Of a DNA stretch of 64,000 nucleotides, positions 1 to 42,930 are shown in pieces. Where the stretch lies: the IMG/VR virus record IMGVR_UViG_3300011113_000640, positions 1 to 64,000 of that record; one strand, written 5' to 3'. Positions within the stretch are counted from its first letter, which is position 1, and the number at the start of each line of letters is the position of its first letter. The notes beneath the pieces were generated by a model that was given only the letters and a program-made list of their open reading frames with translations, searched no databases and had not been told where the DNA came from. Position numbers and translations under genes: made by a program.

Positions 1-919
1 TTCCTAATCCACTTTTTTGAATGCTTTTCAACAAAGGCTTGTAGGTGGCGTGATACAGATATGTATTATCTGCAAGCTCTTGAATTTTCTTGGGCTTTTG
101 CTTGTGTGTTTTGCCATAGTCATACCAGCGATCCACAACATCAAATCCTGGCCGGAAAAATATGGCCATGGGCACACCTTGATCCTGTCTGATCATGCCC
201 ACACGAGTTTTGCCCTGCGGCGCATCTGTTTTTTCTTCTTGACCCACTCGTTGCAACCAAGCATCCGGACGCAGTCTGACCAACCAGGTGTATGGGTGTT
301 GGCTGGCAAAAAGATCGCCACCGCGTAGATAAGTTCGCAAAGGGTAGAACCACAGTGCCGGTCGTCCCGACGGTCTGGGCAGGGCCAAGGGATCATAGCC
401 AGGATCGTCAATGTCGGGTGTTCGACCAAAATGCTGGCGAGCACTGAATCCCAACTTGTCCTGATCTGTGAATCTCACAAAATATTCATCAGGCGAGCCC
501 GGCAAGATGGTTGCCATGTTTTCTATCTCAGTTCTGGCGTCTTGGGCTTCTGTGATCTGGGTTTCCCAAACATTTTGTCCTGGTCTATGTTTCTGCCAAA
601 ATGCCGCACCGGCATCGGTTTGTTGCCCACTGCGCCGGATGCGATAGCCTCGGCTTTTCACGTAGTCATACATGACAGCGGCAATGCCTTGACCTTGGAA
701 TCGTGGATCTACTTCCAGATCCTGTGGATTTAGTATCAGGCCTTGGCCGTCATAGCTCATGGTGAATAAGACATGACCTAGTTCTTTTCCGCCCCGACTG
801 GCTGTCACATATACAGTTTGATTATCAGCGTCATCATCGTCAACATAGTCATCGTCTTTTTGTATTTCAAAAGAGATATCTATGCCTTCAAAATCTCTAA
901 CAAACTCTTGGGCTCTCAT
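1..919 (-). CDS. Multi-domain (polyvalent) protein, truncated by window edge: GNAT acetyltransferase-like domain plus ADP-ribosyltransferase-like domain(s)
   Basis: Not in the ORF track because it runs off the window. Hand translation from ATG 919, which overlaps the TGA of the upstream gene: MRAQEF...LEVDPRFQGQGIAAVMYDY (GNAT motif A)...EYFVRFTDQDKLG...ALWFYPL...YLYHATYKPLLKSIQKSGLG (ART/Tpt1-like H-x-T start). Confidence 0.75.
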   Translation of the reverse strand, partial: MRAQEFVRDFEGIDISFEIQKDDDYVDDDDADNQTVYVTASRGGKELGHVLFTMSYDGQGLILNPQDLEVDPRFQGQGIAAVMYDYVKSRGYRIRRSGQQTDAGAAFWQKHRPGQNVWETQITEAQDARTEIENMATILPGSPDEYFVRFTDQDKLGFSARQHFGRTPDIDDPGYDPLALPRPSGRPALWFYPLRTYLRGGDLFASQHPYTWLVRLRPDAWLQRVGQEEKTDAPQGKTRVGMIRQDQGVPMAIFFRPGFDVVDRWYDYGKTHKQKPKKIQELADNTYLYHATYKPLLKSIQKSGLG

Positions 920-2043
920 AGGCTGTAGGGATCCACTATGACCAAGTGGCCGTTGTTTCTGCGGCCAAGATTTTCCACGGCTGTCAAATCCAAGGGAGCT
1001 TGTCCACCCAGCACCTGTATCATGTCTTCGGTGGCCTGTATGAGTCCAAATATTTCCGCCTCGCTCATTTCTGCGGGCACAGGATTCCGCTGAAGAAACT
1101 GTTCACCCTGTTCACGGTCCACAGCACTCATGAGCTTTTCTATGTAGTCCAGTGTGGCTTCTTCGTTGGCCACATAGTTCACACGTTCCATTTCATACAC
1201 AAAGTAAGTTTCACCGTCTACCGTGAAGTTGCCTGAGTTGTAGATTCTTGGGTAGAAAGGATTCCGTTGATTCTGTTCAAAGAACCGCACATAGCGTCGG
1301 ACTACCTGTTCACGCTCGTCTTCGCCAATACCCAGTACTTTCAATATGGTACCACGTGGACTTTCGAACGCCATTTGATCACGTCCTTCACCGGCCAGTT
1401 CATAGCCACGCTGGAAAAAGTATTGTTGTATTCTATCACTGACTGTGAGTTCGTCGGGATAGTTTACTTCCTTGATTTGTTGAGCTGGCACCCACGCTGA
1501 GATATAATCACGATTCAGCAGATTTTTAGCGGCCCAGGCTCGGTGATTGCCATCTATGATATATCTGTTGGCATCTATCACAATAGGACGTTTGTCAATG
1601 AGATTCAGGCTGACTTCGCCAGCATGGCCAGGGTCTACTGCCATGACACGACCGTAGGGATCACTTTCAGGCTCTTGTTCCACATCGTCATATTCTTCAT
1701 CGGGTATGTTGAGATTCAGCAAGGGTACTTGTTGTAATTGCCACTGAGGATGAGATAATACTGTTTTCTCTAACTTAGGAATCAAAGATTCGTGATGTGT
1801 TTGATTGATGTAGTCTAAAACTTGTTGTGCTGTGGCGGTTTTACTTTCTTTAAGACTGTCAAATCGTTTGACCCAGACAAATCTAGTAGTGTCTGGAATC
1901 CACTTGACTCCCATGTGGCTCTTTGTGTCTGGATTGGTATTGATCAAGAAATCGCCGTCTTGATGCTTCAATATCTGTACTATTTGGCCAGTCTTTTCGA
2001 TCTTGGCCATGACTCTAGTAGAGGTAAATTCTTCGGCTCTCAT
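916..2043 (-). CDS. Multi-domain protein: ParB/Srx-like domain plus protein-kinase-like domain
   Basis: Start reset to MRAEEF (ATG 2043, 6 nt after TAAATA). IIDGNHRAWAA is a ParB/Srx motif. GEGRDQMAF..ILKV..YEMERV..DL..EN..LVIVDP fits kinase-fold motifs. Confidence 0.7.
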   Translation of the reverse strand: MRAEEFTSTRVMAKIEKTGQIVQILKHQDGDFLINTNPDTKSHMGVKWIPDTTRFVWVKRFDSLKESKTATAQQVLDYINQTHHESLIPKLEKTVLSHPQWQLQQVPLLNLNIPDEEYDDVEQEPESDPYGRVMAVDPGHAGEVSLNLIDKRPIVIDANRYIIDGNHRAWAAKNLLNRDYISAWVPAQQIKEVNYPDELTVSDRIQQYFFQRGYELAGEGRDQMAFESPRGTILKVLGIGEDEREQVVRRYVRFFEQNQRNPFYPRIYNSGNFTVDGETYFVYEMERVNYVANEEATLDYIEKLMSAVDREQGEQFLQRNPVPAEMSEAEIFGLIQATEDMIQVLGGQAPLDLTAVENLGRRNNGHLVIVDPYSL

Positions 2044-2047
2044 AAAC

Positions 2048-2452
2048 TTATTTACGCGGCCTGCCGGCAGTAACTCTCTGTATGAGCTCGGCTGCATGCT
2101 CTAGGTTATTGTATTTTAATCTACAGAATGTGGCACTGACTATGCCTTTTGCGTAGGCAGTGCCCAATCCTTGTGCTATTTCGTTGAGTGCTCGAGCCGC
2201 TTTAAATCCATTTGCGTTTCTGGGAATGAATTCTGAATAGCGTTCAAATGTCATGGTCCTGCGTGTAATGTCTTGGGCATTGGCAGAACTGGCCTGGAAG
2301 TTGTCACACTGCTGACGATACTCGCCGGCCATGACTCGGATCTCAGTGATCTGCAGGTACTCGTTGGCGTCATAGGGTGCCATCAAGTAGGCATCCAACA
2401 AGGCACAACTGCTCAGCAACACACAGGTCAGGGCTAGAACAATACGTTTCAT
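2048..2452 (-). CDS. Hypothetical lipoprotein
   Basis: Signal peptide with lipobox LLSSC. Confidence 0.7.
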   Translation of the reverse strand: MKRIVLALTCVLLSSCALLDAYLMAPYDANEYLQITEIRVMAGEYRQQCDNFQASSANAQDITRRTMTFERYSEFIPRNANGFKAARALNEIAQGLGTAYAKGIVSATFCRLKYNNLEHAAELIQRVTAGRPRK

Positions 2453-2559
2453 GGTCGTTCCTTGTCAGGCCAGAATATCACGGCCGCGGCCACTGACACT
2501 GCTATCATCACCACAGTCCAGCCCAGCACTTCCAACGCATAGAACATAAAATCAAGCAT
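2449..2559 (-). CDS. 36-aa single-TM membrane peptide
   Basis: Hand translation [36 protein letters not shown]. Coupled by TGATG and ATGA overlaps to both neighbours. Confidence 0.6.
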   Translation of the reverse strand: MLDFMFYALEVLGWTVVMIAVSVAAAVIFWPDKERP

Positions 2560-3854
2560 CAGTGAAACTGTTCCTCTTCAGTGCTGCCCTTGAGTGCCTG
2601 TGTTGACGCTGTGGCTTCTATGGTGGTGGTCACACGGTCAAAATAGCTGGTTCCTACTTCTCTTTGGTGTTTGACTGCTTCAAAACCTCGCGCACCATCG
2701 GCAAATTCTTTTTGCTGTAGGTCCACAAATGCCGACATGCCATTCCTAGCATAGCCATGAGCCAGATCAAACATGCCGTGATTAAGAGCATGAAAGCCAG
2801 CGAGTGTAATGAATTGAAACTTGTAACCCATAGCTCCAAGTTCACGTTGGAAAACGCTGATTGTTGTATCATCTAAATTCTTCTTCCAGTTAAAAGATGG
2901 CGAGCAGTTGTAGGCCAACATCTTGTTAGGGAATTTGTCATGAATTGCATCGGCAAATTTCTTAGCAAAATCCAGATCTGGCGTGCCTGTCTCGCACCAG
3001 ATCAAATCTGCGTAAGGTGCATAGGCCAGGCCACGACTCACGGCCTGCTCAAAGCCGTTGCGTGTTTCATAGAAACCTTCCACTGTGCGCTCACCGGTCA
3101 GGAAAGGTCGGTCGTTTTCGTCCACGTCACTGGTGACCAATGCGGCTGCTTCGGCATCTGTGCGTGCCAATAATACTGTGGGCACACCCAGCACATCGGC
3201 AGCTAGTCGTGCAGCATTGAGTTTGTTGACAGCTTCGCGGGTGGGAATCAAGACCTTGCCGCCCATGTGACCGCACTTCTTGGCACTGGCCAACTGATCT
3301 TCAAAATGCACACCAGCTGCACCGGCTTCGATCATGGCCTTCATGAGTTCGTAGGCATTTAATACACCACCAAAGCCCGACTCGGCGTCGGCCACTATGG
3401 GCTGGAAAAAGTCCACATCTCCAGAACCTTCCATCCACTGGATCTGATCGGCACGTGCAAATGTGTTGTTGATTTTACGTACCATTTCAGGCACTGAATT
3501 CACGGCGTATAAACTTTGATCAGGATACATTTGTCCTGACGTGTTGGCATCAGCTGCCACTTGCCAACCACTTAGATAAATTCCTTTGAGTCCAGCCTTG
3601 ACCTGTTGCAATGCCTGCATGCCTGTTAGTGCGCCTAGGGTGTTAACATAATCTTCTTCCAACAAGCTCATCCATAGTTTGTTGGCACCACGTTCGGCCA
3701 AGCTGTATTCCACAGGATTGGATCCTTGCAAGTCCACTACCTGTTCGGCGGTGTAGTTGCGTTTGATGTGGTCCCAGCGTGGGTTGCTTTCCCATTCTTT
3801 TCTAATGTGTGTTGCTCGTGCTTTTTTGTTCAACGACATTTTGCTTCCTTTCAA
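2559..3854 (-). CDS. aceA: Isocitrate lyase
   Basis: Full-length 431 aa with [22 protein letters not shown], catalytic [25 protein letters not shown] and HQREVG. Confidence 0.97.
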
Positions 3855-3860
3855 CGGTTA

Positions 3861-4472
3861 TTATTTGCTGATGCTTTCGAATATCGTTTTCTGTTCACGA
3901 TACCATTCCTGCCAGGCCTTTAGTTTTTCTGCGTTTTCGTGGCAGGCTCCGTAGTTTTCGATGACTCGGTCGAGGAGACGACTGGCTTCAATGGCACTGG
4001 GGGTTCCATCAGTTGCGGTGGCACGCTGGGGAACTTGATTGAGACTGGCACTGTCGTGCAAGCTGACAGTGCTACGAGGCAAACTGCACTGAGCATCCAA
4101 CTGCCGACCCGCTGTGTCACGGACGATTTCTCTTGTGATGTATACATTTTCTTTGACCACCTTTACTTTTTCAATTATCTTGGTTTCAATCACAGTGTTG
4201 ACCTGCTGTGACTTCTCTTCTGCGATTCGGACTCGTTGTTTCATTTCTGCTATCTGTTCTCTGTAGCTGATGCCACCCGAGAAATAAGCGGCAATGACTA
4301 AAGCCAACACACCCATTAATTCTGCGGGCAAACGATACTGACCTATGAGTGGTATCCATGACACCAGCTTGCTGGCCACATACAGGATCACACCTGCCCC
4401 AAACAACAGATAGGTCAGCCAGACAAATATGCTGTCAGGTATCAGTTGCAGGAGCCATTGTATCTGCCACAT
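3861..4472 (-). CDS. Rz-like inner-membrane spanin
   Basis: N-terminal TM segments followed by a coiled coil. Lies directly after the endolysin and contains a nested lipoprotein ORF. Confidence 0.75.
   Translation of the reverse strand: MWQIQWLLQLIPDSIFVWLTYLLFGAGVILYVASKLVSWIPLIGQYRLPAELMGVLALVIAAYFSGGISYREQIAEMKQRVRIAEEKSQQVNTVIETKIIEKVKVVKENVYITREIVRDTAGRQLDAQCSLPRSTVSLHDSASLNQVPQRATATDGTPSAIEASRLLDRVIENYGACHENAEKLKAWQEWYREQKTIFESISK
3920..4096 (-). CDS. Rz1-like outer-membrane spanin lipoprotein, nested in Rz
   Basis: MLSAVCLVALSAC lipobox and Pro-rich mature part (KFPSVPPQLMEPPVPLKP), in an alternate frame inside Rz. Confidence 0.75.
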   Translation of the reverse strand: MLSAVCLVALSACTTVPVSIKFPSVPPQLMEPPVPLKPVVSSTESSKTTEPATKTQKN

Positions 4473-5098
4473 CAGTGACCGCCAAATACATGTAGGGCAT
4501 GAGCATAGTGTTTCATCCTATCCTCGAGTCCAATGGTGCCGCCGTTGATTCTTTTTGTCATGGTCAGGATGTCATTGTTGTCAGCATATTGATTCAAGTT
4601 GTTGGTCTCCCAGAACCAGCAGGCACTTTGTACTGCACCTTCAAAGGTTTCCAAGTAAGCACTGGTTTCTTCCACTGGTGTTTCTATTGAATCAGCAAAG
4701 TTTGAGTAGTTGCTCTTGCCTGTGAGCTGGATCAAGCCACGACCGCAGTAACGGAAACCATCGCCGCTCTCTTCAGGACCATTGCCCATTCTGTTGGCAT
4801 AGATCCTGTTGGCTATGGCTTCGGCCTTGTTGGGCAAACCAGCATACTGTTCAGCTAGGGCATCTGTGGGAAAATACTTGGGAAATATCTTTCTTAGACT
4901 TGCGGCACGATAATTGAGATTTTCTTTGAGGAACACAAATCCGCCTGACTCATGGGCGCATTGTGCCAAAAAAGCAGCCACACGCTGTGGAGTGTCAATG
5001 CTGTAGTCAGGCAATAATTTGTTTAGGGCACTGCACCACTGATCGATGTAGGGATTTTTAGGTATGATTTGTGCTAGTTGTTCTCTGGTGATTTCCAT
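4472..5098 (-). CDS. Glycoside hydrolase family 19 endolysin
   Basis: AAFLAQCAHESGGF, LKENLNY, YANRMGN, GRGLIQLTGKSNY, TKRINGG. Confidence 0.93.
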   Translation of the reverse strand: MEITREQLAQIIPKNPYIDQWCSALNKLLPDYSIDTPQRVAAFLAQCAHESGGFVFLKENLNYRAASLRKIFPKYFPTDALAEQYAGLPNKAEAIANRIYANRMGNGPEESGDGFRYCGRGLIQLTGKSNYSNFADSIETPVEETSAYLETFEGAVQSACWFWETNNLNQYADNNDILTMTKRINGGTIGLEDRMKHYAHALHVFGGH

Positions 5099-5205
5099 GG
5101 GTATTCCTTGATGATATCCATATTTAGTTTGCCGCAAGTTGATTTTTTATACATTTTACTCCGCAATGATGATTACAAGTATTTTATCCAGTATTGGTTG
5201 CAAAC

Positions 5206-5213
5206 TATAAATA
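5206..5213 (+). promoter_or_regulatory. T4-type late promoter TATAAATA
   Basis: Exact TATAAATA 5 nt before ATG 5219. The core TAAATA also precedes starts on the - strand at 2049-2054, 11791-11796, 14332-14337, 24826-24831, 32871-32876, 33791-33796, 41857-41862 and 44909-44914, and on the + strand at 11736-11741 and 60152-60157. Confidence 0.65.
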
Positions 5214-5218
5214 GCAAT

Positions 5219-6355
5219 ATGAACGTTCTTGTTTTAACTCCAGACCGTGTGGGCAGCAGCTTTTTACAACGATTGATAACCGTTTATATGACAGCGCACA
5301 AATATGATCGCCCAGTGATCAACATACACGAACTCACTGATCCTATGTTCATCAAATATCACAGCCCTGTATTCAATCAAGAAGTCATTGGGTGTTCCTT
5401 TAAACTAGGCAAACATAGATCATTGCCTGAAATTGTTGAACTATTAAAATCAACCGATCATTACAAAGTTTGTAGACTAACTCAGTTCTATTTGAAACAA
5501 CGCCAAGATTCAATAGCAGATCAGGTAGAGTTATATCACTATCTCAATGACAATTATTTTATTATCAGTGCTCGCAGAGATAACATGTTTGAGTACGGGC
5601 TGAGCTGGTGCATAGCCAAAGAATCTCATTTAATGAACGCTGCAAGTCATGAAGAAAAATTCAATTATTTTAAAAAATTATATCGTAATAAAATTACTGT
5701 AGATCCGCAAATGTTGTTGCATCACATTTATCAATATCAAGACTATATTAAATGGGTCGATGAATCATTTAAAGTTAATTCATATTTTCATTATGATCGA
5801 GACATGACTCGTATTGAGGATTACGTTCTAAACTTAAACATATTCAAAGATCAAGAAAAAAAGAAATCTTGGCAAGATATATTTGGTATCAATTTTACTG
5901 ACTGGAACAAATGTCATTATCTCATCAGCGATATGAGTGGCATTGGCCAACAGTTAGAAAAAAACTTTGATGTGCCAAAATTAACTTACGATAGTAATGA
6001 TACCGGTGTGCAATTACAGTGTGTTGAGCCCGATTATATACCACAGACTCTGACTCAGGAAGATCAACGCTTGTTGATTGAAAAAGGCCCGGCATACACT
6101 CAGGCCGCTGACGCTATACAAGAGCTGGTGGATCACAAAGTGCTGTATAAAGCTGTGCCAATTAAATTACAAACCATGATGGAAAAACGACTGTTGGTCA
6201 GTAACTTTGATGAGTGTCTTGAAGCTTATAATCGTGCTGTGGAAGATCCATTGTGTGGTCTGTATAATATGAGAAAAACTCTAGGCTTAGATGATATTTC
6301 TAAAATTTCAGAAGAAGAAATCAAACGCTGGCATAACTTGCCAAAATTAACCTAA
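5219..6355 (+). CDS. Sulfotransferase-like P-loop protein, paralog 1
   Basis: Start reset to MNVLVLTPDRVGSSFLQRL (5'-PSB-like loop). IISARRDNMFEYGLSW resembles the 3'-PB R...S motif. AT-rich. Confidence 0.6.
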   Translation: MNVLVLTPDRVGSSFLQRLITVYMTAHKYDRPVINIHELTDPMFIKYHSPVFNQEVIGCSFKLGKHRSLPEIVELLKSTDHYKVCRLTQFYLKQRQDSIADQVELYHYLNDNYFIISARRDNMFEYGLSWCIAKESHLMNAASHEEKFNYFKKLYRNKITVDPQMLLHHIYQYQDYIKWVDESFKVNSYFHYDRDMTRIEDYVLNLNIFKDQEKKKSWQDIFGINFTDWNKCHYLISDMSGIGQQLEKNFDVPKLTYDSNDTGVQLQCVEPDYIPQTLTQEDQRLLIEKGPAYTQAADAIQELVDHKVLYKAVPIKLQTMMEKRLLVSNFDECLEAYNRAVEDPLCGLYNMRKTLGLDDISKISEEEIKRWHNLPKLT

Positions 6356-6439
6356 CATCGTCTCCAGACATAGGCGTAACACCGGTAGATAAACAGCTTG
6401 ATTATATAACAGACATCTATTGCAAAAATAAGTAATGGC

Positions 6440-7729
6440 ATGAATGTTCTGATCCTGACTCCAGATGCGGTAGGCAGTACTCTTTTACAGCGGCTAATTA
6501 CCATTTACATGCAGTTCCATCACTATGATCGCCCCGTGATCAATCTGCACGAACTCACCAACGGCTTGGTCAAATATCATAATGAGCATTTTGGTCACGA
6601 AGTTTTGGGCAAGAAAACTGGCAAGTGGGGCTACTATCAAAGTTTGCAAGAAGTTGTTGAATTGCTGAGCAGTGTGGATCACTACAAGACCAGCAGGCTG
6701 GCACACTATCACATACGAAATCGTCAAGACAACCTGGCAGATCAGATACCATTTTATCAATACCTCAATGATAATTTTTACATTATTAGTTGTCGCCGAC
6801 ACAACATATTTGAACATGCACTGAGTTGGTGTCTCAGCAAGGTTACCAAAAAACTCAATGTGTATTCAGGCACAGAAAAAATCGACAATTTTTTTGACAT
6901 TTACCGCAACGGTATTGAACTGGACCCCAACAGCCTACTACAAACACTAAACGCCTACAAGGACTATGTGAAGTGGTGCAATGATCATTTTGATGTGGCC
7001 AATTATTTTTTCTACGAAGAACACTTGCCCAACATTGAAAAATACATTTTGAACCTACCAATTTTCGCACAACAACCTCAACAGTTGACCTGGCAGGACA
7101 ACTTTGGCATGCAATTTAACAAGTGGAACATGTGTCATTATGTCAGCAGCGATCTAGGAACCTTGGCCTTGGACAAACCAGAAACATTTGCACAGTTGGC
7201 TGATCAATCACGCACCTACAAATTAGGCGATGCAGATCACACACTAATCAAAGGATACAAGGATGTGCGTGATCCCAGCTGGCCAGAGGTCAATACTATG
7301 GAAGATTATGAAAGTTTACCTCAACATATCAAGGATGAAGTTGAACAAAAACATGGAATAAGTCTTGGCACCAACACCAGCCTGGTCAGCTACACAGCAT
7401 TACACAAACCTTTGATCGAACTATTGCCCAAGGAACATCAAGAATTCCTGCAGCAGAATCAAGAGACTTATGATCAAAGCATGAAAAATATTCATCAAAT
7501 GGTCACCAATGGAATCATAGTCAGTGATCCTCCAATCAAAAAACAAACCTTGGCAGAAAAAAAGCACATGATCAAAAACTATCAGCATCTGTTGACCGTT
7601 TACAATCAATGGATTGAACAAAATCCAGATCTAGGGCGTCCGTTAGACAATGACACCTTGGATCAGTTTGCTGATATGGAACGAGCTAGGTGGAATCCTG
7701 CTACTACAGCAATAACAGTATCTGATTGA
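6440..7729 (+). CDS. Sulfotransferase-like P-loop protein, paralog 2
   Basis: MNVLILTPDAVGSTLLQRL and IISCRRHNIFEHALSW. Clearly colinear with the upstream paralog. Confidence 0.6.
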   Translation: MNVLILTPDAVGSTLLQRLITIYMQFHHYDRPVINLHELTNGLVKYHNEHFGHEVLGKKTGKWGYYQSLQEVVELLSSVDHYKTSRLAHYHIRNRQDNLADQIPFYQYLNDNFYIISCRRHNIFEHALSWCLSKVTKKLNVYSGTEKIDNFFDIYRNGIELDPNSLLQTLNAYKDYVKWCNDHFDVANYFFYEEHLPNIEKYILNLPIFAQQPQQLTWQDNFGMQFNKWNMCHYVSSDLGTLALDKPETFAQLADQSRTYKLGDADHTLIKGYKDVRDPSWPEVNTMEDYESLPQHIKDEVEQKHGISLGTNTSLVSYTALHKPLIELLPKEHQEFLQQNQETYDQSMKNIHQMVTNGIIVSDPPIKKQTLAEKKHMIKNYQHLLTVYNQWIEQNPDLGRPLDNDTLDQFADMERARWNPATTAITVSD

Positions 7730-8561
7730 CCAGACTTTGACTAGTAAGGATGTCATAATGATGTCCATCACGGGCTAGATCTAACACTTTGATTTCTGGA
7801 ATCACTAGACCTTTCACTTTAGATTCCACAACACCTTTGAATGATTTAGGGACAAAATTTGGAATAAAAGTGTGTATGATTTTTGTATTGCAATCATTGG
7901 ACTCTAACACTTGATAGATATTGTGCAAGATGTTTTCGATGTCTTCTTCGTCAGTGCAGTTGCCTCCTCGCAACCTTCTCCATTCATCTTGCATACATGA
8001 ATCATTCCATCCGCCGTGTACAGAATCAATTTCATCTTGTATTTTTTGTGGTAATGTGTGGCGATTCTGTCTGGTGCAACTAGGCCAACTATCATCACGT
8101 ATGCTATTGTAAAAATTTTGCCAATGTTGATCCAATATCGTTTGCAGATTTTCTTCGCGACGATTCACATAACTCCACTGTATGATCATGAGCTTGGGTT
8201 GGATTTGTTTTAGGATATCTATAGATTTTCTGGATATCCAGTCGTTGCTGGCTCCATCCATGCTGACATTTACGGTTCTGGTGCCAATGGATTGTTGCAA
8301 AATATAGCTCCAGGTGTGTTCTCTAGGGCTTCCTAGACCCACAGTAAAACTGTCGCCTACACACCAAATGGCCTTGGATAGTTCTGACAGTGAGTCTGGC
8401 CAGCTTTGATCTCGATAGCCACGATTGTTGTAACGATATTCTACTTGATAGGGATAAGATCTATAGTGCTCACGATCCAGGCACTGATCTTCACAGTCAA
8501 TGCCAGTGGTAGACCAGCACTGGTCAACACGACTGGGTATTACAAAGTCAGGTAGGATCAT
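7704..8561 (-). CDS. SGNH/GDSL-like hydrolase or acyltransferase
   Basis: VGDSFTVG block I, NVSMDGASNDWI block II, and DGHH near the C-terminus. Confidence 0.65.
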   Translation of the reverse strand: MILPDFVIPSRVDQCWSTTGIDCEDQCLDREHYRSYPYQVEYRYNNRGYRDQSWPDSLSELSKAIWCVGDSFTVGLGSPREHTWSYILQQSIGTRTVNVSMDGASNDWISRKSIDILKQIQPKLMIIQWSYVNRREENLQTILDQHWQNFYNSIRDDSWPSCTRQNRHTLPQKIQDEIDSVHGGWNDSCMQDEWRRLRGGNCTDEEDIENILHNIYQVLESNDCNTKIIHTFIPNFVPKSFKGVVESKVKGLVIPEIKVLDLARDGHHYDILTSQSLVNQILLLL

Positions 8562-8608
8562 TTTTTATACGACTCAAGAAATCCACTTCATGTTCGTAGT
8601 TGTTGAGC

Positions 8609-9445
8609 CTATTCCAGGCCCATTTCGCGGCGGATTTTAGTTGCCGATATGCTGTGTGTAGCATCGTCAAAAGTTTCCTGTTCAATCTTATAACCCACAT
8701 CACGACCATAGGTGATATTAACTATGTTGGGCACTACCTGTATCTCATACTGTCCTTGAAACACAGGATCTAGATCTCTGCGAATATAGTTTTTAACTTG
8801 TTCTATGGCAAAGGGATTTGATCCTTGCCAACCCTGACAGTCGCGAATCATTATACAGACCTGTCCGGTCTTGGCTATGGCACGTTCAAACAAGGCCCTA
8901 TGGCCAGCATGCCAAGGTTGCCAACGTCCCAGCATCTGCACAGTTTCTTTCTGCCAATCAAATGTGGGTCTACGGCGCTTGTCAATGATGTGCGATCCCA
9001 CAAACTCAGCCCATTTTTCAGCATTTTGTTCTGTGATGCGGAAATCATACACTTCAGGTGGCACAAACATTTTGTTGGTGTCTTCAAAGCGACCGGCTTC
9101 GATGGTGTCCATCCATATGGTCCAGTCGGCCTTGAAGTTGTTGCGCATCTCTGGAATAGGCGCTACAAAATCGCAGATCACATAGTCCGTGCTGGTAGCC
9201 AAGGCAAACTCCAGCATCCTCAGACTTTGACGTATGCGTCCTTCTTTGCTGAAGTCCCAGTCGTTGTATTTTCTGCGCACATCATCGGCATTGAACCAGG
9301 TCACTGTGGCGTTGAGTCCACCAATGGGCATCATTTCAGGTATGTGTTGTGTGATGCCATGCTGTTCTAGATAGGTTTTTAATCTCTCTGCGAAGTAAGT
9401 CTTGCCCGAACCGGGCAAGCCCATGATCAATATTTTTTGTTTCAT
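8609..9445 (-). CDS. Adenylyl-sulfate (APS) kinase-like domain fused to HxGH nucleotidyltransferase
   Basis: GLPGSGKT, NADDVRRKYNDWDFSKEGRIRQ and ICDFVAP match CysC-like kinases. C-terminal LGRWQPWHAGH. Confidence 0.8.
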   Translation of the reverse strand: MKQKILIMGLPGSGKTYFAERLKTYLEQHGITQHIPEMMPIGGLNATVTWFNADDVRRKYNDWDFSKEGRIRQSLRMLEFALATSTDYVICDFVAPIPEMRNNFKADWTIWMDTIEAGRFEDTNKMFVPPEVYDFRITEQNAEKWAEFVGSHIIDKRRRPTFDWQKETVQMLGRWQPWHAGHRALFERAIAKTGQVCIMIRDCQGWQGSNPFAIEQVKNYIRRDLDPVFQGQYEIQVVPNIVNITYGRDVGYKIEQETFDDATHSISATKIRREMGLE

Positions 9446-10748: not shown

Positions 10749-11720
10749 TTATTTCTCTACTTTGATGTTTTTAGCTATGGGTGCAAAGGCTGTGCGTAGT
10801 TCTTCTGCATAGGCCATGACACCACGTGGGTTGAGTTCATCACGGTCTATGATTATATAGTTTTGTTCTGCCCAGTCTTGATATTCTTTGCTTAGTATTG
10901 CTTTAGAGAACTTGTCCACATACCAGTCCACAATGGTGTTTGGTGTCTGTGGTGGCAACACAACTACCCAGCCAGCATAAACTTTGAGTCCTGGAATAGT
11001 GTCACTGAGCAGGGGCACCGTAGGTAATGCTTTTAGTTTAGGTCCACCTGTGAGTCCTATAGTTTTGACTTTGCCTGATTCTATGAGAGGCCGGGCAATG
11101 GCTATGGGCATGATGCCAAATTCAGTGCCGGTTTTGCCGTCGTAGCTGGCCACTGATGTCACTGCCGGCAATGGCCCATTAAAAGCCACGTGTTGTATGA
11201 GCTTGGGATCAGCCTTGGTCTTGGCCATGATGTACTCATAGGCCATACGGTGTGCACCGCCACCCACAGCAATGTTCACAGTTTTACCATTGGTTATGTA
11301 TTTTACAAATTCTTGTGGTGTGTTTACTGCGCTTTTACTTGAGGCTACCAGGACCAGGGGACTCTTGCCCAGGGTTATCACAGGCTTGAAACTGTTGTAT
11401 TCAAACCGCTTGATGTCCTTCTGCCAGATATCGTTTGTGACAAACAGACTCATGTGGCTGGGCACCATTAAATGTAGTCCGTCGCTGGATGCGTTCATGA
11501 ATGCGTTTGATGCCACAGCAGCATCAGCACCAGGTCGTGTTTCAACAGTAAAGGCCACACCTGGGTTTTGATTGGCGACTATTTCGCTGGCTTTGCGAAA
11601 ACTGATTTCATTGCCACTGCCAGGAGCAAATCCAATGGTCGCGTTTACAGGTTTGTTAGGGGCCCATTGCGCCCAGGCCAAAGCAGGCACGACCAATAAG
11701 GTCAGTAATAATTTTTTCAT
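10749..11720 (-). CDS. tctC: Tripartite tricarboxylate transporter substrate-binding protein (TctC/Bug family)
   Basis: Signal peptide, IGFAPGSGNE, VETRPGA, VLASSKS..TPQEF, HVAFNGPLPA, LKALPTVP, GWVVVLPPQTP. Confidence 0.85.
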   Translation of the reverse strand: MKKLLLTLLVVPALAWAQWAPNKPVNATIGFAPGSGNEISFRKASEIVANQNPGVAFTVETRPGADAAVASNAFMNASSDGLHLMVPSHMSLFVTNDIWQKDIKRFEYNSFKPVITLGKSPLVLVASSKSAVNTPQEFVKYITNGKTVNIAVGGGAHRMAYEYIMAKTKADPKLIQHVAFNGPLPAVTSVASYDGKTGTEFGIMPIAIARPLIESGKVKTIGLTGGPKLKALPTVPLLSDTIPGLKVYAGWVVVLPPQTPNTIVDWYVDKFSKAILSKEYQDWAEQNYIIIDRDELNPRGVMAYAEELRTAFAPIAKNIKVEK

Positions 11721-16581: not shown

Positions 16582-17499
16582 TTATATTATAGATTGATTT
16601 TTTGGACAATTATATTGGCAAGCTGACTGTAGATCCAAATTTTGATAAAATTCTACAACCAATTTATCAGCAAGCAACTGGCTGATAGTGGTTTTGGTTA
16701 TGTCGTAACTTTTTTTATTTTTTCCAAATTGATGCTTGTAATAAAATCTATGGTCGGCTACCCAACAACAAGGTGAATAATAGCCATCTGCGGTGATAAA
16801 ATGTTCTCTACCTGTGTTGCACTTGGGTTCGACCTGGGGTATGAGATTTTCTTTTTTCCATCTTTCCATGGAAACGAATCTTTCTCCAATTAACTCGTCA
16901 GATCTGGGCAACAGGTCCAAGGTTTGTTCGTCAAAACGATCACTGGGGTCCAGAAAAAAAGTATCTACCCCTAGTTCTTGAGACATTTTTTTGGCCTGTT
17001 CAACAGTTTCTTCATTGTAAGCAAAAGGAATGTATTTCCATACAGTTTGACAGTTGCTGGCCACACAGGTTTTAATGGCGGTTTGTATGCTGGGCCAGTC
17101 GGCATTTTTTCTATACTGCGTGAAATTATCTGGTGTGCCGTCTATGCTAAATTGCACTACGTCATCTTTATCAAGATACCCGGTCAATTGTTGCCACCAG
17201 CTTTGAGATTGATAACTGCCATTGGTAGTGATCGATATCATGGTTCCTGCTTGCTTGAGCTTGGCCACAAAATTGATCAGATCACTGTGATATATTGGGT
17301 CTCCATAGTTTCCGCAGAGAACCATGCGTTTGCCCGAAAGATCGATATCTAAAAATGACAGCAATAAGTCAATATCAAGATTGTGATTTTTCCAGTGCCC
17401 GGGCCATTGATTGATAAATCTGGTCCTGGCACATCCGGAACATTTGAGAGTGCAGATATTGGTAGGTTCTATGTGGAACCCAGTGATGGTATCAATCAT
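16582..17499 (-). CDS. Radical SAM enzyme with C-terminal SPASM/twitch-like domain
   Basis: Start reset to MIDTIT. CTLKCSGC, GNYGDP, ITTNGS, FSIDG, C..G...DG..SPCC...CQYNC. Confidence 0.9.
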   Translation of the reverse strand: MIDTITGFHIEPTNICTLKCSGCARTRFINQWPGHWKNHNLDIDLLLSFLDIDLSGKRMVLCGNYGDPIYHSDLINFVAKLKQAGTMISITTNGSYQSQSWWQQLTGYLDKDDVVQFSIDGTPDNFTQYRKNADWPSIQTAIKTCVASNCQTVWKYIPFAYNEETVEQAKKMSQELGVDTFFLDPSDRFDEQTLDLLPRSDELIGERFVSMERWKKENLIPQVEPKCNTGREHFITADGYYSPCCWVADHRFYYKHQFGKNKKSYDITKTTISQLLADKLVVEFYQNLDLQSACQYNCPKNQSII

Positions 17500-17500
17500 G

Positions 17501-17785
17501 CTAGGAAGTTTTGTTGATATCTTCTTTGGATAGTTCGTGTCCGTTTTCCTGGAACAAGCGTTCAATGGTGGTTGCATAGTGTTTGTAATAGTAGCTGACA
17601 ATGGTATCCCAATCTTTGGTGGCACTAAGTCCGGCCACGCTACACAACAACACCCGCTGTTCCTTAAAATCCAGGATAACATTGGTCATTTGCCAATCTT
17701 TGCGCCTGAGTCTTTTCGAGATAGTCATGACTTCATCAATCTTGCCCGAAGGTTTAGTGTAGTAGGTTAATAACAGATATCTCAT
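17501..17785 (-). CDS. Hypothetical protein
   Basis: 94-aa ORF packed between its neighbours. Confidence 0.65.
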   Translation of the reverse strand: MRYLLLTYYTKPSGKIDEVMTISKRLRRKDWQMTNVILDFKEQRVLLCSVAGLSATKDWDTIVSYYYKHYATTIERLFQENGHELSKEDINKTS

Positions 17786-18867
17786 ATTAAATTTATTCCT
17801 AAGTAATTGCGATGATCGATGTTGCGTCTTGAATCTAGATCTTTGATGTAGGAACTCAACAAAATTGAATCTCCTGGAGTTAGTATAAGATCAGTGATGT
17901 TATCAATTTTTGTTTTAAAAATTAAATCATTTTGATAAAATCTTGATTGACGAATATTTACAAAATTATCATGTACTGTTTGTTTTATTTCTGGTGGCAA
18001 ATTATTGACCAGTAATGCCCGAGGCTTTGTTAAAATTGACAGAGTCCATTGATGGCACAGGTGTTCTATTTCTTGTAGCCGGTGTAAATTTAAAATACTC
18101 ACAGCATCAACTACTGTGTTAAATTGTATGTTACAGTTGATACTATTTGCCCACTGGAGATTTTCTAAAAATTTTGACCATTTCATTGGCCATCTGTGAT
18201 ATTCATTTATTTTTTCTACACCATCTACGCTGACCGTTAGTGTTAATTTTTTTATTCTTTTTAAAAATTCTTTCAAATTGTCATTGGTCCGGGTTAAATT
18301 AGTGTTTATAACTAGTTCGGGCTGTTGATCCAAGGTTGAAATATATTCTATTAATTGAATGAACTGATCGATAATTAAGGGTTCTCCTCCGGCCAGGTAA
18401 ACTTTTTTCGCCAGTTTTATTTTTTCTAAATCAAGTTTTAATTTACGAGACTTGGAATTTATTCCTAATTCTTTGGCCCAAAGAGAACTTTCGGTTGGAT
18501 TACAGGTAATACATGCCAAGTTGCATTTGTTATCATATCTTATGTCGTAAAAAAATACCTGGCGTGGCGAATCCTCAGTCCACTTTTCTATGTAATCGCT
18601 TACTTCTGCATGTTTTAGCCATCGAGCTGATTCCAAAAGCCTTGGACTAATTACTTGCGATTTTTCAAGATCGTAACATGATTGACAATGGACAATTTTT
18701 TCTCCGTTTTTTATTTTTTTTCTTAGTTCATTTGAACTAACAGAATCTAAATGATCAATTGAAGTAGGACTATAACAGCAAAAACGTTGGGCGTCACCTA
18801 GCGGATAAAATTGTTCAATGAATGGCAAAACACAAAAGGCCGGATTACTCAACCATTTAGTTGACAT
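17782..18867 (-). CDS. Radical SAM enzyme with N-terminal Cys-rich (twitch-like) domain
   Basis: Start reset to MSTKWL. FCVLPF..CC..CQSC, CNLACITC, LAGGEP, NTNL, SVDG. Strongly AT-rich. Confidence 0.9.
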   Translation of the reverse strand: MSTKWLSNPAFCVLPFIEQFYPLGDAQRFCCYSPTSIDHLDSVSSNELRKKIKNGEKIVHCQSCYDLEKSQVISPRLLESARWLKHAEVSDYIEKWTEDSPRQVFFYDIRYDNKCNLACITCNPTESSLWAKELGINSKSRKLKLDLEKIKLAKKVYLAGGEPLIIDQFIQLIEYISTLDQQPELVINTNLTRTNDNLKEFLKRIKKLTLTVSVDGVEKINEYHRWPMKWSKFLENLQWANSINCNIQFNTVVDAVSILNLHRLQEIEHLCHQWTLSILTKPRALLVNNLPPEIKQTVHDNFVNIRQSRFYQNDLIFKTKIDNITDLILTPGDSILLSSYIKDLDSRRNIDHRNYLGINLI

Positions 18868-19775
18868 AGTTCTACCAAGGTTGCACTCAAGTTGATTTCC
18901 TGGTCGGCCACCAAGGGAACATTGACCAAGCCGTTGCGTATGATTATGATGGCCTGATCCTGCCGTTCTGGATCCTTGGCCCACAAGTCCAGGTTGTCAT
19001 ACATCCAGCGGAATATGTCATCGGCTTCTTCGGGAGTGCTTGATTGGCAAATCAATGTTCTGGCTTCTTTGATTTTTCCGTCTTTGAACAGTTGCACACA
19101 GTCCAGTTTCCAATCTCCTGCGGCCTTGTCGGCTGAGCTGGGTGGCACCAGATGACCTGTGGTGCTGTTCTGTTGAGTCAAGTTTAGGCATTTGCGTAGA
19201 TCTGGATAAGTGGCTCGCACGTAGCTGTCAAGAGTATCAATGTCAAATTCCACCTGTTCAGTGACCAGTACCGTGGCCACTCGAGCAGTGAATTCCACCT
19301 GATCAGTTTTGACTATGTGCAGTTGTTGACAACGACTGTGTATGGGTGGAATGATCTTGTTGGGATAGTTACAGGTCAAGATGAATCTCACATGATCACT
19401 GTAGTCTTCCATGAGATTGCGTAGTGCCGGTTGCACACTTTGTGGATTCATGTAGTCAGCTTCGTCGATCAGCACAACCTTGAACGCACCAAAAGGCATG
19501 GTCTGGCAAAATGAAATCAGTTTGTCCACCCACTCGATCTTTCTAGCTTCTTTAGATCCATTGGCCCACATCACATCATATTCGTCGATACCCAGCTCAT
19601 TGATCAGCATTTTGGCCAAGGTGGTCTTGCCTGTGCCAGGGCCACCTGAAAACAACAAGTGCGGAATACTTTTTTCTTTGATCCAACTTTCAACCAGGGT
19701 TCTTTGATTGTGATCCACAAACACATAACCGTCTGCAGTTTTGGGACGGTATTTTTCTACCCAAAGTTCTTTCAT
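18849..19775 (-). CDS. Sliding-clamp loader AAA+ subunit (RFC/T4 gp44-like)
   Basis: WVEKYRP, GPGTGKTT, IDEAD, FILTCN, PIHSRC, YPDLRK. Confidence 0.95.
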   Translation of the reverse strand: MKELWVEKYRPKTADGYVFVDHNQRTLVESWIKEKSIPHLLFSGGPGTGKTTLAKMLINELGIDEYDVMWANGSKEARKIEWVDKLISFCQTMPFGAFKVVLIDEADYMNPQSVQPALRNLMEDYSDHVRFILTCNYPNKIIPPIHSRCQQLHIVKTDQVEFTARVATVLVTEQVEFDIDTLDSYVRATYPDLRKCLNLTQQNSTTGHLVPPSSADKAAGDWKLDCVQLFKDGKIKEARTLICQSSTPEEADDIFRWMYDNLDLWAKDPERQDQAIIIIRNGLVNVPLVADQEINLSATLVELCQLNG

Positions 19776-41878: not shown

Positions 41879-42886
41879 TTATTTTTTGATCAAAGCCCAC
41901 TGCTCGCTACGGATGCGATCTGTGACTGCCTTGGGCAGGGGAACATAGTCTAGATCAAGAGCACTTTTACCACCCTTGTCCCAAGCATAAGCAAAGAACT
42001 TGAGTACTTCTTGTGTGGCTTTGACGTCTTTGGGTTCACGATATACCAACACAAACGTGGCACCAGTGATGGGCCAAGCATCAGCACCCTTTTGATTCAC
42101 CAGGCTGATACCCATGCCCGGTGTTTTAAACCAGTCAGCGTCCTTGGCAGCTGCGGCAAAAGTCGTGTCATCGGGTTGCACGTATCGTCCATCACGATTC
42201 TGCATCTTCACGTGAGGAATGTTGTTTTTCTTGGCATAGGCATATTCCACATAGCCAATCGAACCTTTCACACGGTTGACCACAGCGGACACACCTTCAT
42301 TGCCCTTGCCACCCACGGCTGTGGCTGGAATCCATTTTACAGCGGCACCTTTGCCCATGCGTTCAGCCCAGGACTTGGATACTTCGTTCAAATAGTCTGT
42401 GAAGATAAATGTTGTGCCGGATCCATCAGCACGATGCACCACAGTGATTGGCAAGTCGGGCAAGGTCTTGCCAGGATTCAAGGCCGCAATCCGAGCATCG
42501 TTCCACTTGGATATAGTTCCAAGATAGATGTCTGCCAAGACTGCGCCTGTGATCTGTAGTTCACCAGGTTTGAAACCATCAAGGTTTATGATAGGAACCA
42601 CACCGCCCAACACAGTGGGGAACTGGATCAAGCCGGCCTGGGCTAGATCTGCTACATTCATGGGTGCATCAGTGGCACCAAAGTGAACTGTGCCAGCACG
42701 GATCTGCTTGATACCGCCCGAGCTACCAATGCTCTGATAGTTGAGCTTGACACCGGTGATTTTTTGATAATCCACTGACCATTGCGAGTAGATGGGAAAT
42801 GGGAATGTGGCACCTGCTCCTGTGATTTCCACAGCAGACACCGAAGTCGCTAATACAGTCAATACAGCGGCTAAAAACTTTTTCAT
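41879..42886 (-). CDS. pstS: Phosphate ABC transporter substrate-binding protein
   Basis: GAGATFPFP, YQSIGSSGG, FGATDAP, HRADGSGTT, GGKGNEGV, IGYVEYAYA, WPITGATF. Confidence 0.97.
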   Translation of the reverse strand: MKKFLAAVLTVLATSVSAVEITGAGATFPFPIYSQWSVDYQKITGVKLNYQSIGSSGGIKQIRAGTVHFGATDAPMNVADLAQAGLIQFPTVLGGVVPIINLDGFKPGELQITGAVLADIYLGTISKWNDARIAALNPGKTLPDLPITVVHRADGSGTTFIFTDYLNEVSKSWAERMGKGAAVKWIPATAVGGKGNEGVSAVVNRVKGSIGYVEYAYAKKNNIPHVKMQNRDGRYVQPDDTTFAAAAKDADWFKTPGMGISLVNQKGADAWPITGATFVLVYREPKDVKATQEVLKFFAYAWDKGGKSALDLDYVPLPKAVTDRIRSEQWALIKK

Positions 42887-42930
42887 TGGATCTCCTTGAT
42901 AGTTGTTGTGCGAAGGCACACGTTTACTTA

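What the first reader, a model, noticed from the sequence alone, without database searches (positions are those of the whole stretch)
2559..3854. Intact isocitrate lyase placed inside the late lysis operon
Seen: full-length AceA with the KKCGH catalytic loop starts 6 nt after the Rz stop and is coupled to a TM peptide and a lipoprotein downstream. No malate synthase is present in the window. Established: AceA opens the glyoxylate shunt, which spares carbon and lowers respiratory NADH and Fe demand. Inference: the phage reroutes host TCA flux late in infection. This is an uncommon auxiliary metabolic gene, and its position among lysis genes is odd.
Basis: partly seen in the sequence, partly recalled or inferred. 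Interest (0 to 1): 0.65.

Follow-up and report, generated by a model that had tools for sequence, protein, structure and literature searches.

The report
Phage isocitrate lyase in lysis cassette
A 320-kb freshwater T4-like jumbo phage carries an intact, strongly conserved isocitrate lyase in a variable cargo slot of its lysis gene cluster; such phage genes have been reported before, so this is a well-documented new example, not a new kind of thing.

Summary
It lies between an Rz/Rz1 spanin pair and a phage lipoprotein, downstream of a GH19 endolysin. The likely start is the ATG at 3839, 21 nt after the Rz stop, not the TTG at 3854.

It is not an assembly chimera. Six other viral contigs share the arrangement, and contigs from three or four other studies bridge the junctions.

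The 320-kb record is a gp23-capsid jumbo phage with no malate synthase, AceK, ICDH or aconitase.

ICL is under strong purifying selection (dN/dS 0.04-0.08). It belongs to a 35-member phage-only ICL clade that is sister to Burkholderiales enzymes.

The spanin-lipoprotein gap is a cargo slot: empty in one relative, holding a glycosyltransferase in another, and holding an ICL of a different phage subclade in a third.

A T4-late-type motif, the one found before tail and head genes, precedes the endolysin. This supports late expression, but no RNA data exist.

Phage ICL is already published (2013, 2017, 2025). The metabolic role is inferred, not shown.

The parts
5121..5127 (-). CTAAATA, a T4-late-promoter-like motif 22 nt upstream of the endolysin ATG
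   Evidence: [AC]TAAATA lies 8-60 nt upstream of 25 gene starts where 2.4 are expected. It precedes the tail tube, tail sheath, head-tail adaptor and tail genes. The motif is conserved before the endolysin in seven relatives that have different upstream genes; L158 has GATAAATA.
4472..5098 (-). GH19-type endolysin. The likely start is the ATG at 5098 with an AAGGAA ribosome-binding site; the ORF is open from the TTG at 5137.
   Evidence: phrog_181 endolysin 2.1e-75; Pfam Glyco_hydro_19 at 26.1 bits.
3861..4472 (-). Rz-like i-spanin, 203 aa, with two N-terminal hydrophobic segments. Its start overlaps the endolysin stop.
   Evidence: phrog_4952 2.6e-26; phrog_1403 Rz-like spanin; hydropathy.
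3920..4147 (-). Embedded Rz1-like lipoprotein (o-spanin) in another frame of Rz, with lipobox LSAC
   Evidence: phrog_31473 and phrog_456 Rz-like spanin. 62% identical over 39 residues to the separate Rz1 of relative L155.
2559..3839 (-). Isocitrate lyase (aceA), 426 aa from the ATG at 3839. The longest ORF runs from the TTG at 3854 and gives 431 aa.
   Evidence: NF011645 773 bits against a cut-off of 562. PDB 3i4e 717 bits, with KKCGH and all other motifs kept. dN/dS 0.04-0.08. 65 of 65 nucleotide differences to L003 are synonymous.
2449..2559 (-). 36-aa single-TM peptide, translationally coupled on both sides
   Evidence: Overlaps of TGATG and ATGA; one hydrophobic segment at residues 11-29. 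Found only in the window and L003. No family match.
2048..2452 (-). 134-aa lipoprotein (lipobox LSSC), a conserved member of the lysis module in this phage group; function unknown
   Evidence: Present next to the spanins in L003-L007, L155, L158, L159 and in L032, L033, L038. Only virus-only atlas clusters match.
916..2097 (-). Conserved downstream gene (likely start MRAEEF at 2043), the first of a run of genes that begin MRA-x-EF
   Evidence: 76-96% identical in the relatives' tblastn segments. Only a weak ParB-like PHROG match.
10749..11720 (-). TctC/Bug-type periplasmic tricarboxylate-binding protein with a signal peptide, co-directional with the operon. It is tentatively linked to ICL and not shown to be part of the same unit.
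   Evidence: Pfam TctC 57.6 bits against a cut-off of 27. In L003, L004 and L155 it lies one gene upstream of the endolysin. ATAAATA lies 70 nt upstream. There is no TctA in the genome.

Best explanation
The gene is a catalytically competent isocitrate lyase that a lineage of T4-like freshwater jumbo phages has kept as an auxiliary metabolic gene. The probable host is a Gram-negative bacterium, probably of the Burkholderiales.

In this phage the gene occupies a hypervariable cargo slot between the spanin genes and a conserved lipoprotein gene of the lysis cassette. There it is most likely transcribed from the late-type promoter in front of the endolysin, as part of one tightly packed operon: endolysin, Rz/Rz1, ICL, TM peptide, lipoprotein.

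Once made in the infected cell, the enzyme competes with host isocitrate dehydrogenase and cleaves isocitrate to succinate and glyoxylate. The phage has no malate synthase, so the host enzyme must complete the bypass.

The expected effects are that carbon is kept as C4 units for biosynthesis, and that less NAD(P)H, less respiratory load and less iron demand arise while virions are being built.

Shown: enzyme identity, intactness, selection, real junctions, the slot's variability, and the promoter-like motif.

Inferred: late timing, use of host malate synthase, the physiological benefit, and the host.
For: - **Identity:**
- **Viral genome:** a Gp23 capsid protein at 189 kb, plus tail sheath, tail tube and adaptor genes.
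- **Junctions:** L003 is a 337-kb contig with the locus in its interior. Its ICL is 100% identical at the amino-acid level, while the aligned endolysin-to-lipoprotein stretch is 92.5% identical at the DNA level. L004-L007 and L159 share the order. Logan contigs bridge Rz|ICL (X1 exact, X2, X5) and ICL|TM36|lipoprotein (X1 exact, X3, X2).
- **Selection:** dN/dS is 0.04-0.08 at dS 0.6-1.4. Between the window and L003, 65 nucleotide differences give no amino-acid change.
- **Long residence in phages:**
  - The careful tree puts the window in a 36-row clade (35 viral) with support 99/97.
  - That clade is sister to the Burkholderiales (89/83).
  - Gene G+C is 0.49, against 0.55-0.69 for most of the cellular relatives (four of them are lower, 0.48-0.50).
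- **Slot variability:** empty in L158, GT25-like gene only in L155, ICL plus varying partners elsewhere. The whole 317-kb record of L158 has no ICL.
- **Late motif:**
- **No other shunt or TCA genes:**
- **Host malate synthase is plausible:** aceB lies beside aceA in about 24 of the 80 sister-group loci.
- **Link between the shunt and iron limitation in bacteria:** PMC11069385.
Against: - No transcript data exist, so both timing and expression are unproven.
- The exact T4 octamer TATAAATA is not enriched in this genome. The endolysin motif is the weaker CTAAATA variant. No gp55/gp33 late-factor search was made.
- The host is unknown, so the presence of a host malate synthase is assumed.
- A close relative lives without ICL, so the gene is dispensable in some settings.
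- The tree sampled only the 80 best of at least 591 cellular hits, so the donor lineage is provisional.
Confidence: 0.7

Rival explanations
1. The enzyme is not used to run the full glyoxylate shunt. It is used for one of its products or for a side activity. Candidates are succinate to feed respiration through complex II under iron limitation, glyoxylate for glycine and purine synthesis, lowering 2-oxoglutarate, or 2-methylisocitrate cleavage.
For: - No malate synthase is present in this phage, and a preprint reports it only in huge phages from marine, soil and plant-related habitats, not freshwater.
- In other phages ICL sits beside a di-iron ribonucleotide reductase, a fatty-acid desaturase and the Fe-S scaffold NifU. 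In 14 loci it sits beside a class II aldolase.
- AceA has secondary 2-methylisocitrate lyase activity in Pseudomonas (abstract of PMC11982470).
- aceA but not glcB is needed for growth in Acinetobacter (abstract of PMC6779741).
Against: - The protein scores as an ICL equivalog, far above the methylisocitrate lyase models (773 against 101 bits).
- Malate synthase is common beside aceA in the sister bacterial group, so the full shunt is the simplest outcome.
- Some marine phage contigs carry aceB-aceA together.
Confidence: 0.2
2. ICL works together with the phage TctC binding protein. The phage boosts uptake of external tricarboxylates (citrate or isocitrate) through the host's TctAB membrane parts and cleaves them with its own ICL.
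For: - A TctC with a signal peptide lies on the same strand. In L003, L004 and L155 it is only one gene upstream of the endolysin-ICL array.
- A late-type ATAAATA motif lies upstream of it.
- The phage also carries a PstS-like binding protein, so it does invest in uptake proteins.
Against: - L155 has TctC but no ICL, and most ICL-bearing contigs have no TctC nearby.
- Bug/TctC proteins bind many different carboxylates, so the ligand is unknown.
- There is no TctA in the phage.
- No test of binding or co-expression was made.
Confidence: 0.1
3. The placement among lysis genes is functional. ICL tunes the energy state of the cell and thereby the timing of holin-triggered lysis.
For: The position between the spanins and the lysis-module lipoprotein is kept in seven contigs. 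Two deep ICL subclades occupy the same slot.
Against: - In most phages ICL is nowhere near lysis genes.
- The same slot holds a GT25-like glycosyltransferase or an aldolase, or is empty.
- No holin was identified here.
Confidence: 0.04
4. The locus is an artefact: a chimeric assembly, host DNA at a contig end, or a decaying passenger gene.
For: The gene lies 2.5 kb from the left end of a linear contig. Gene G+C is slightly above that of its flanks.
Against: - The same arrangement lies in the interior of a 337-kb contig and in five more contigs from other metagenomes.
- The junctions are bridged in runs from other studies.
- Phage genes lie on both sides.
- There are no stops or frameshifts, and dN/dS is about 0.05.
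Confidence: 0.02

Closest known systems
Isocitrate lyase genes of huge phages (bioRxiv 10.1101/2025.02.27.640493; 98 ICL genes in 98 huge phages)
   Same: A jumbo phage from freshwater, with ICL present and no malate synthase, read as an auxiliary metabolic gene of the glyoxylate cycle.
   Different: In the text read here (searched only for ICL and glyoxylate), that report gives counts, habitats and malate-synthase adjacency. Added here are the lysis-cassette slot, the empty-site relative, the exchange of ICL subclades at one site, the selection measures and the late-promoter motif. Whether this exact contig is in that collection was not checked.
Marine viral aceA / aceBA (Hurwitz 2013, PMC4053976; Nishimura 2017, PMC5332604: aceBA operon in a 179-kb T4-like environmental genome)
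   Same: T4-like viruses carry ICL. The marine contigs L047, L053, L056, L066 and L070 found here also have aceB directly upstream of aceA.
   Different: The window's ICL belongs to a separate clade close to betaproteobacterial enzymes, lacks aceB, and sits in a lysis cassette.
Bacterial AceA of Burkholderiales (solved structure 3i4e) and the enterobacterial aceBAK operon
   Same: Same fold, length and catalytic motifs. 77-80% identity to Sphaerotilaceae-type enzymes and 66% to Salmonella AceA.
   Different: No aceB, aceK or iclR neighbours. G+C and context match the phage. It forms a phage-only clade.
Cargo genes (morons) carried in or next to phage lysis cassettes and driven by the late promoter, such as lambda bor or stx next to the lysis genes of lambdoid phages (own knowledge, not tested here)
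   Same: A non-lysis cargo gene is inserted among late lysis genes, so that it inherits late transcription. The slot content varies between close relatives.
   Different: The cargo here is a central-metabolism enzyme in a lytic-type T4-like jumbo phage, not a lysogenic-conversion gene of a temperate phage.

Membership tests
Isocitrate lyase (EC 4.1.3.1; NCBIfam NF011645 / TIGR01346; Pfam PF00463) | Whole-protein score above the curated equivalog cut-off | tested here: met
   NF011645 773 bits (cut-off 562); TIGR01346 610 bits (cut-off 276); PF00463 355 bits (cut-off 26).
Isocitrate lyase (EC 4.1.3.1; NCBIfam NF011645 / TIGR01346; Pfam PF00463) | Catalytic loop KKCGH with the active cysteine | tested here: met
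   The motif is present and aligned to the same motif of 3i4e and 7cmx.
Isocitrate lyase (EC 4.1.3.1; NCBIfam NF011645 / TIGR01346; Pfam PF00463) | Metal- and substrate-binding motifs ([37 protein letters not shown]). The residue roles are recalled from published ICL structures. | tested here: met
   All are identical to the solved Burkholderia enzyme in the printed alignment.
Isocitrate lyase (EC 4.1.3.1; NCBIfam NF011645 / TIGR01346; Pfam PF00463) | Full length with the C-terminal segment, no truncation or frameshift | tested here: met
   Residues 7-430 align to 4-432 of the 439-residue chain 3i4e_A. The frame is open, with no internal stop.
Isocitrate lyase (EC 4.1.3.1; NCBIfam NF011645 / TIGR01346; Pfam PF00463) | Cleaves isocitrate to succinate and glyoxylate | not testable with these tools
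   Needs an enzyme assay or complementation.
Phage auxiliary metabolic gene | Encoded in a genuine viral genome with viral genes on both sides | tested here: met
   Gp23 capsid, tail sheath, tail tube and adaptor genes in the same 320-kb record. Endolysin and spanins lie upstream, and conserved phage genes lie downstream.
Phage auxiliary metabolic gene | Maintained by purifying selection within phages | tested here: met
   dN/dS 0.04-0.08; 65 synonymous and 0 non-synonymous differences to L003; a phage-only clade of 35 sequences.
Phage auxiliary metabolic gene | Expressed during infection | not testable with these tools
   No RNA run holds the sequence. Only promoter-motif evidence is available.
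Complete glyoxylate shunt module (aceB/glcB + aceA, with or without aceK) | Malate synthase encoded with ICL | tested here: not met
   PF01274 finds nothing in the 320-kb record. tblastn with Salmonella AceB finds nothing.
Complete glyoxylate shunt module (aceB/glcB + aceA, with or without aceK) | AceK kinase/phosphatase | tested here: not met
   PF06315 and tblastn with Salmonella AceK find nothing.
Gram-negative phage lysis cassette (endolysin, holin, i-/o-spanin) | Endolysin and a two-component spanin with an embedded lipoprotein gene | tested here: met
   phrog_181; phrog_4952/1403; phrog_31473/456; lipobox LSAC.
Gram-negative phage lysis cassette (endolysin, holin, i-/o-spanin) | Holin | tested here: inconclusive
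   No family match. The candidates are the 36-aa TM peptide and the extra N-terminal hydrophobic segment of Rz.
T4-type late transcription unit | Late promoter motif (TATAAATA-like) upstream, shared with virion genes | tested here: inconclusive
   CTAAATA lies 22 nt before the endolysin ATG and is conserved in seven relatives. [AC]TAAATA is enriched tenfold before gene starts, including tail and head genes. The exact octamer is not enriched.
T4-type late transcription unit | Phage late factors (gp55/gp33-like) present; transcript start mapped | not tested
   No search for the late factors was made. No RNA data exist.

The most novel reading that the evidence does not exclude
The gap between the spanins and the lipoprotein is a dedicated late-expressed cargo slot, through which phages of this group exchange ICL alleles. 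Two deep phage ICL subclades sit at the same site in backbones whose endolysins are 95% identical. In addition, ICL acts together with the phage's own periplasmic TctC protein as a virus-directed route to take up and cleave tricarboxylates during virion production.
Probability: 0.12. Interest if true: 0.6.

Novelty: new member of a known kind. Interest (0 to 1): 0.4.

Why it matters
It gives a clean, well-supported case of a central-carbon enzyme kept by jumbo phages. The junctions are real, the active site is intact, purifying selection is very strong, and the enzyme belongs to a phage-only clade.

Three concrete handles are added:
- A natural presence/absence series at one genomic slot.
- Evidence that ICL alleles move between phages rather than being re-captured from hosts.
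- A late-type promoter motif in front of the ICL operon here, and directly in front of the ICL gene in many related phages.

Together these make one idea directly testable: that late-infection cells are pushed into the glyoxylate bypass, possibly under carbon or iron scarcity in lakes and rivers.

It does not change what is known in kind, because phage ICL has been reported since 2013.

Tried and rejected
- **Megablast of window 1-9000 against 50,697 phage records:** no match.
- **PHROGs:** no family for ICL.
- **tblastn against the phage records:** only one genuine phage genome, C48C1, carries ICL. The other hits are bacterial contigs or short host-like fragments filed as phage.
- **The exact T4 octamer TATAAATA:** 16 copies against about 16 expected, so it is not enriched. 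I dropped it in favour of the shorter [AC]TAAATA core, which is enriched.
- **The generic sigma-70 and terminator scan:** gave nothing usable for this operon. This genome's own TTGACC-N17/18-TATAAT sites lie before 12 other genes, not this one.
- **Search for RNA runs:** none holds the stretch, so expression could not be tested. The Logan contigs are short. Run X1 may be the source sample and is not counted as independent.
- **Pfam, NCBIfam and PHROGs on the neighbours:** nothing for the 36-aa peptide or the 134-aa lipoprotein, and only a weak ParB-like hit for the 393-aa gene. The atlas search on the lipoprotein returned only virus-only unnamed clusters.
- **Other pathway genes in the phage:** ICDH, aconitase and TctA were sought and not found.

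Full report
**What is there**

On the minus strand of window 1-5200 lies a tightly packed gene array. In order it contains:
- A GH19-type endolysin at 4472-5098 (phrog_181, 2e-75).
- An Rz-like i-spanin at 3861-4472 (phrog_4952, phrog_1403).
- An embedded lipobox ORF at 3920-4147 (phrog_31473, phrog_456).
- The isocitrate lyase ORF at 2559-3854.
- A 36-aa single-TM peptide at 2449-2559.
- A 134-aa lipobox protein at 2048-2452.
- A 393-aa conserved phage gene at 916-2097.

The ICL call is unambiguous:
- It scores 773 bits against the NCBIfam equivalog NF011645 (cut-off 562) and 610 bits against TIGR01346. The methylisocitrate lyase models reach only about 100 bits.
- It aligns over residues 7-430 with the solved Burkholderia enzyme 3i4e at 717 bits.
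- KKCGH and the other conserved active-site motifs are identical.
- It is 77-80% identical to its nearest cellular relatives and 66% identical to Salmonella AceA.

**Fine structure**

But an AAGGAAG ribosome-binding site lies within that extension, 6 nt before the ATG at 3839, and the relatives are 425-426 aa long. The likely start is therefore 3839, 21 nt after the Rz stop.
- The ICL stop overlaps the TM-peptide start (TGATG), and the peptide stop overlaps the lipoprotein start (ATGA).
- The endolysin most likely starts at the ATG at 5098, which has its own ribosome-binding site.
- No terminator-like site lies in the short gaps between these genes; the only minus-strand candidates in the array fall inside the ICL and endolysin coding regions.

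**The genome**

- The window is bases 1-64000 of a 320,541-base IMG/VR virus record, rated 93% complete.
- The record encodes a T4-type Gp23 major capsid protein (326 bits), a tail sheath, a tail tube and a head-tail adaptor. It is therefore a T4-like jumbo phage.
- Rz/Rz1 spanins imply a Gram-negative host.
- The record holds no malate synthase, AceK, isocitrate dehydrogenase, aconitase or TctA.

**Is it an artefact? No**

- The same order (endolysin, spanins, ICL, lipoprotein, downstream gene) occurs in the interior of a 337-kb contig, L003. There the ICL is 100% identical in protein, while the DNA of the aligned endolysin-to-lipoprotein stretch is 92.5% identical.
- The order also occurs in L004, L005, L006, L007 (236 kb) and L159 (112 kb), which come from other metagenomes.
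- The stretch occurs in lake, river and freshwater viral metagenomes from 11 studies.
- Contigs bridge Rz|ICL in runs X1 (exact), X2 and X5. Contigs bridge ICL|TM peptide|lipoprotein in X1 (exact), X3 and X2. X1 may be the source sample.

**Selection and origin**

- Within the window's clade, dN/dS is 0.04-0.08 at dS 0.6-1.4.
- Between the window and L003, all 65 nucleotide differences in ICL are synonymous.
- Gene G+C is 0.49 against 0.46 in the flanks. Most of the nearest cellular ICL genes have 0.55-0.69; four have 0.48-0.50.
- I built a careful tree of 82 rows (IQ-TREE, LG+G4, Salmonella outgroup; three very long viral branches left out):
  - The window falls in a 5-row clade (100/100).
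  - That clade sits inside subclade A of 26 rows (100/99).
  - Subclade A sits inside a 36-row clade of 35 viral sequences (99/97).
  - The 36-row clade is sister to the Burkholderiales enzymes (89/83).
  - The single 'bacterial' row inside the phage clade is a 2.5-kb low-G+C contig of a MAG and is probably phage DNA.
- A second, deep viral clade holds marine-type contigs. Several of these carry aceB directly upstream of aceA.
- One viral sequence, L044, nests among the bacteria.
- Caveat: the cellular sample is the best 80 of at least 591 hits, so the donor assignment is provisional.

**Why among lysis genes?**

The gap between the spanins and the lipoprotein is a variable slot:

| Contig | Content of the slot |
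|---|---|
| L158 (317 kb, 89% complete) | Empty; the Rz stop abuts the lipoprotein start. The whole record has no ICL. |
| L155 | Only a GT25-like glycosyltransferase |
| Window, L003 | ICL + TM peptide |
| L004, L006 | ICL + GT25-like gene |
| L005 | ICL + 84-aa ORF + class II aldolase + GT25-like gene |
| L007 | 126-aa TM protein + ICL |
| L159 | 112-aa TM protein + an ICL of subclade B |

- The L159 ICL is only 76% identical to the window's and is nearest to L028 and L030, although the L159 endolysin is 95% identical to the window's. ICL alleles are therefore exchanged among phages at this site.
- Elsewhere, viral ICL lies beside other genes:
  - ribonucleotide reductase (23 loci)
  - a fatty-acid desaturase (25 loci)
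  - a class II aldolase (14 loci)
  - NifU (12 loci)
  - SNase
  - ClpP
  - SegE-type homing endonucleases
- The window's genome has the desaturase/ClpP neighbourhood at 73-77 kb, without ICL.

**Timing**

- The core [AC]TAAATA lies 8-60 nt upstream of 25 gene starts where 2.4 are expected, mostly 17-27 nt from the ATG. It precedes the tail tube, tail sheath, adaptor and tail genes.
- The endolysin has CTAAATA at 5121-5127, 22 nt before its ATG. The motif, with the following TGG-TAT, is kept in seven relatives whose upstream genes differ; L158 has GATAAATA.
- In 11 of 28 other non-redundant viral ICL loci, ATAAATA lies 21-31 nt before the ICL start itself (a twelfth has TTAAATA).
- Regular TTGACC-N17/18-TATAAT sites precede 12 other genes, but not this operon.
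- This supports late transcription. It remains motif evidence only: the full T4 octamer is not enriched, and no RNA run exists.

**Mechanism**

The most likely reading has four parts:
- A late-made ICL diverts isocitrate from host ICDH into succinate and glyoxylate.
- The host malate synthase completes the bypass. aceB lies beside aceA in about 24 of the 80 sister-group loci.
- The cell saves carbon and produces less NAD(P)H.

A TctC-type tricarboxylate-binding protein with a signal peptide (10749-11720) lies co-directionally. In L003, L004 and L155 it is one gene upstream of the endolysin. A joint uptake-and-cleavage role is possible but weakly supported, because L155 has TctC without ICL.

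**Novelty**

Viral ICL is already known:
- aceAB in Pacific viromes (PMC4053976).
- An aceBA operon in a 179-kb T4-like marine genome (PMC5332604).
- 98 ICL genes in 98 huge phages, with malate synthase found only in those from marine, soil and plant-related habitats (bioRxiv 10.1101/2025.02.27.640493).

The present case is a new member of that kind. The new detail concerns its site, its allele exchange, the selection on it and its likely timing.

Noticed in passing
window 10749-11720 (-); L003:5136-6107; L004; L155: The phage encodes a TctC/Bug-family periplasmic tricarboxylate-binding protein with a signal peptide (Pfam TctC 57.6 bits). There is no TctA in the genome. A late-type ATAAATA motif lies 70 nt upstream.
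   Followed up: partly
window 3861-4472 and 3920-4147 (-); L155:5092-5394: The spanin frames are re-partitioned. The relatives' 100-aa Rz1 aligns with the window's Rz1 over residues 15-53. Over residues 54-100 it aligns with the C-terminus of the window's Rz (residues 157-203). The o-spanin C-terminal domain is therefore read in the i-spanin frame in the window, L003 and L158. This could be a stable rearrangement or a frameshift-dependent product.
   Followed up: partly
window 3861-4472 (-), residues 1-70; window 2449-2559 (-): Rz has two N-terminal hydrophobic segments instead of the usual one, and no holin gene was identified in the cassette. The 36-aa TM peptide differs from L003 by 1 of 111 nt, while its neighbours differ by 5-11%.
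   Followed up: partly
window 5138-8000: A low-G+C island (0.34-0.41) holds two paralogous plus-strand genes (about 5219-6355 and 6440-7729, with no family match). It splits the minus-strand array and is absent from L003.
   Followed up: partly
window 2-2097 (-) and relatives' downstream ORFs: A run of different genes all begin with the same N-terminal motif, MRA-[EQS]-[ED]-F (the 393-aa and 306-aa genes, plus extra ORFs in L004-L007 and L159). The 306-aa one has a weak GNAT match.
   Followed up: no
window 41879-42919 (-); 16582-18984 (-); 46051-47724 (+): Other cargo: a PstS-like phosphate-binding protein (phrog_5385, 1e-64), two radical-SAM proteins, and a DnaE-like DNA polymerase in a phage with a T4-type capsid. 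The nearest polymerase match is a 484-kb uncultured phage at 36% identity.
   Followed up: no
G000 genome-wide, e.g. upstream of gene starts 35116, 40654, 59654 (-): Very regular sigma-70-type sites, TTGACC-N17/18-(G)TATAAT, lie upstream of 12 genes. They are probably the phage's early promoters.
   Followed up: partly
L005:2969-3634 and 13 other viral loci; L027-L048 group: A class II aldolase gene lies directly downstream of ICL in 14 viral loci, and SegE-type GIY-YIG homing endonucleases lie beside ICL in 11. These hint at a metabolic partner and at a vehicle for ICL mobility.
   Followed up: no
L047, L053, L056, L066, L070: Viral contigs of the deep (marine-type) ICL clade carry malate synthase (about 50% identical to Salmonella AceB) immediately upstream of aceA. 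That makes a full phage-borne shunt.
   Followed up: partly
L095 (CAZHOJ010000032.1, 2,496 b): A contig binned into an Ignavibacteriaceae MAG carries an ICL that nests inside the phage clade and has phage-like G+C (0.49 gene, 0.44 flanks). It is probably mis-binned phage DNA.
   Followed up: no
phage collection hits H2, H4, H6-H9: Records filed as phage are host-like ICL fragments or bacterial contigs, not phage-borne ICL: Salmonella phage S.Kent 1-2-1 (4.4 kb), Escherichia phage ECO95 1-6-1 (1.8 kb), and the Acinetobacter phage MD-2021a contigs.
   Followed up: no
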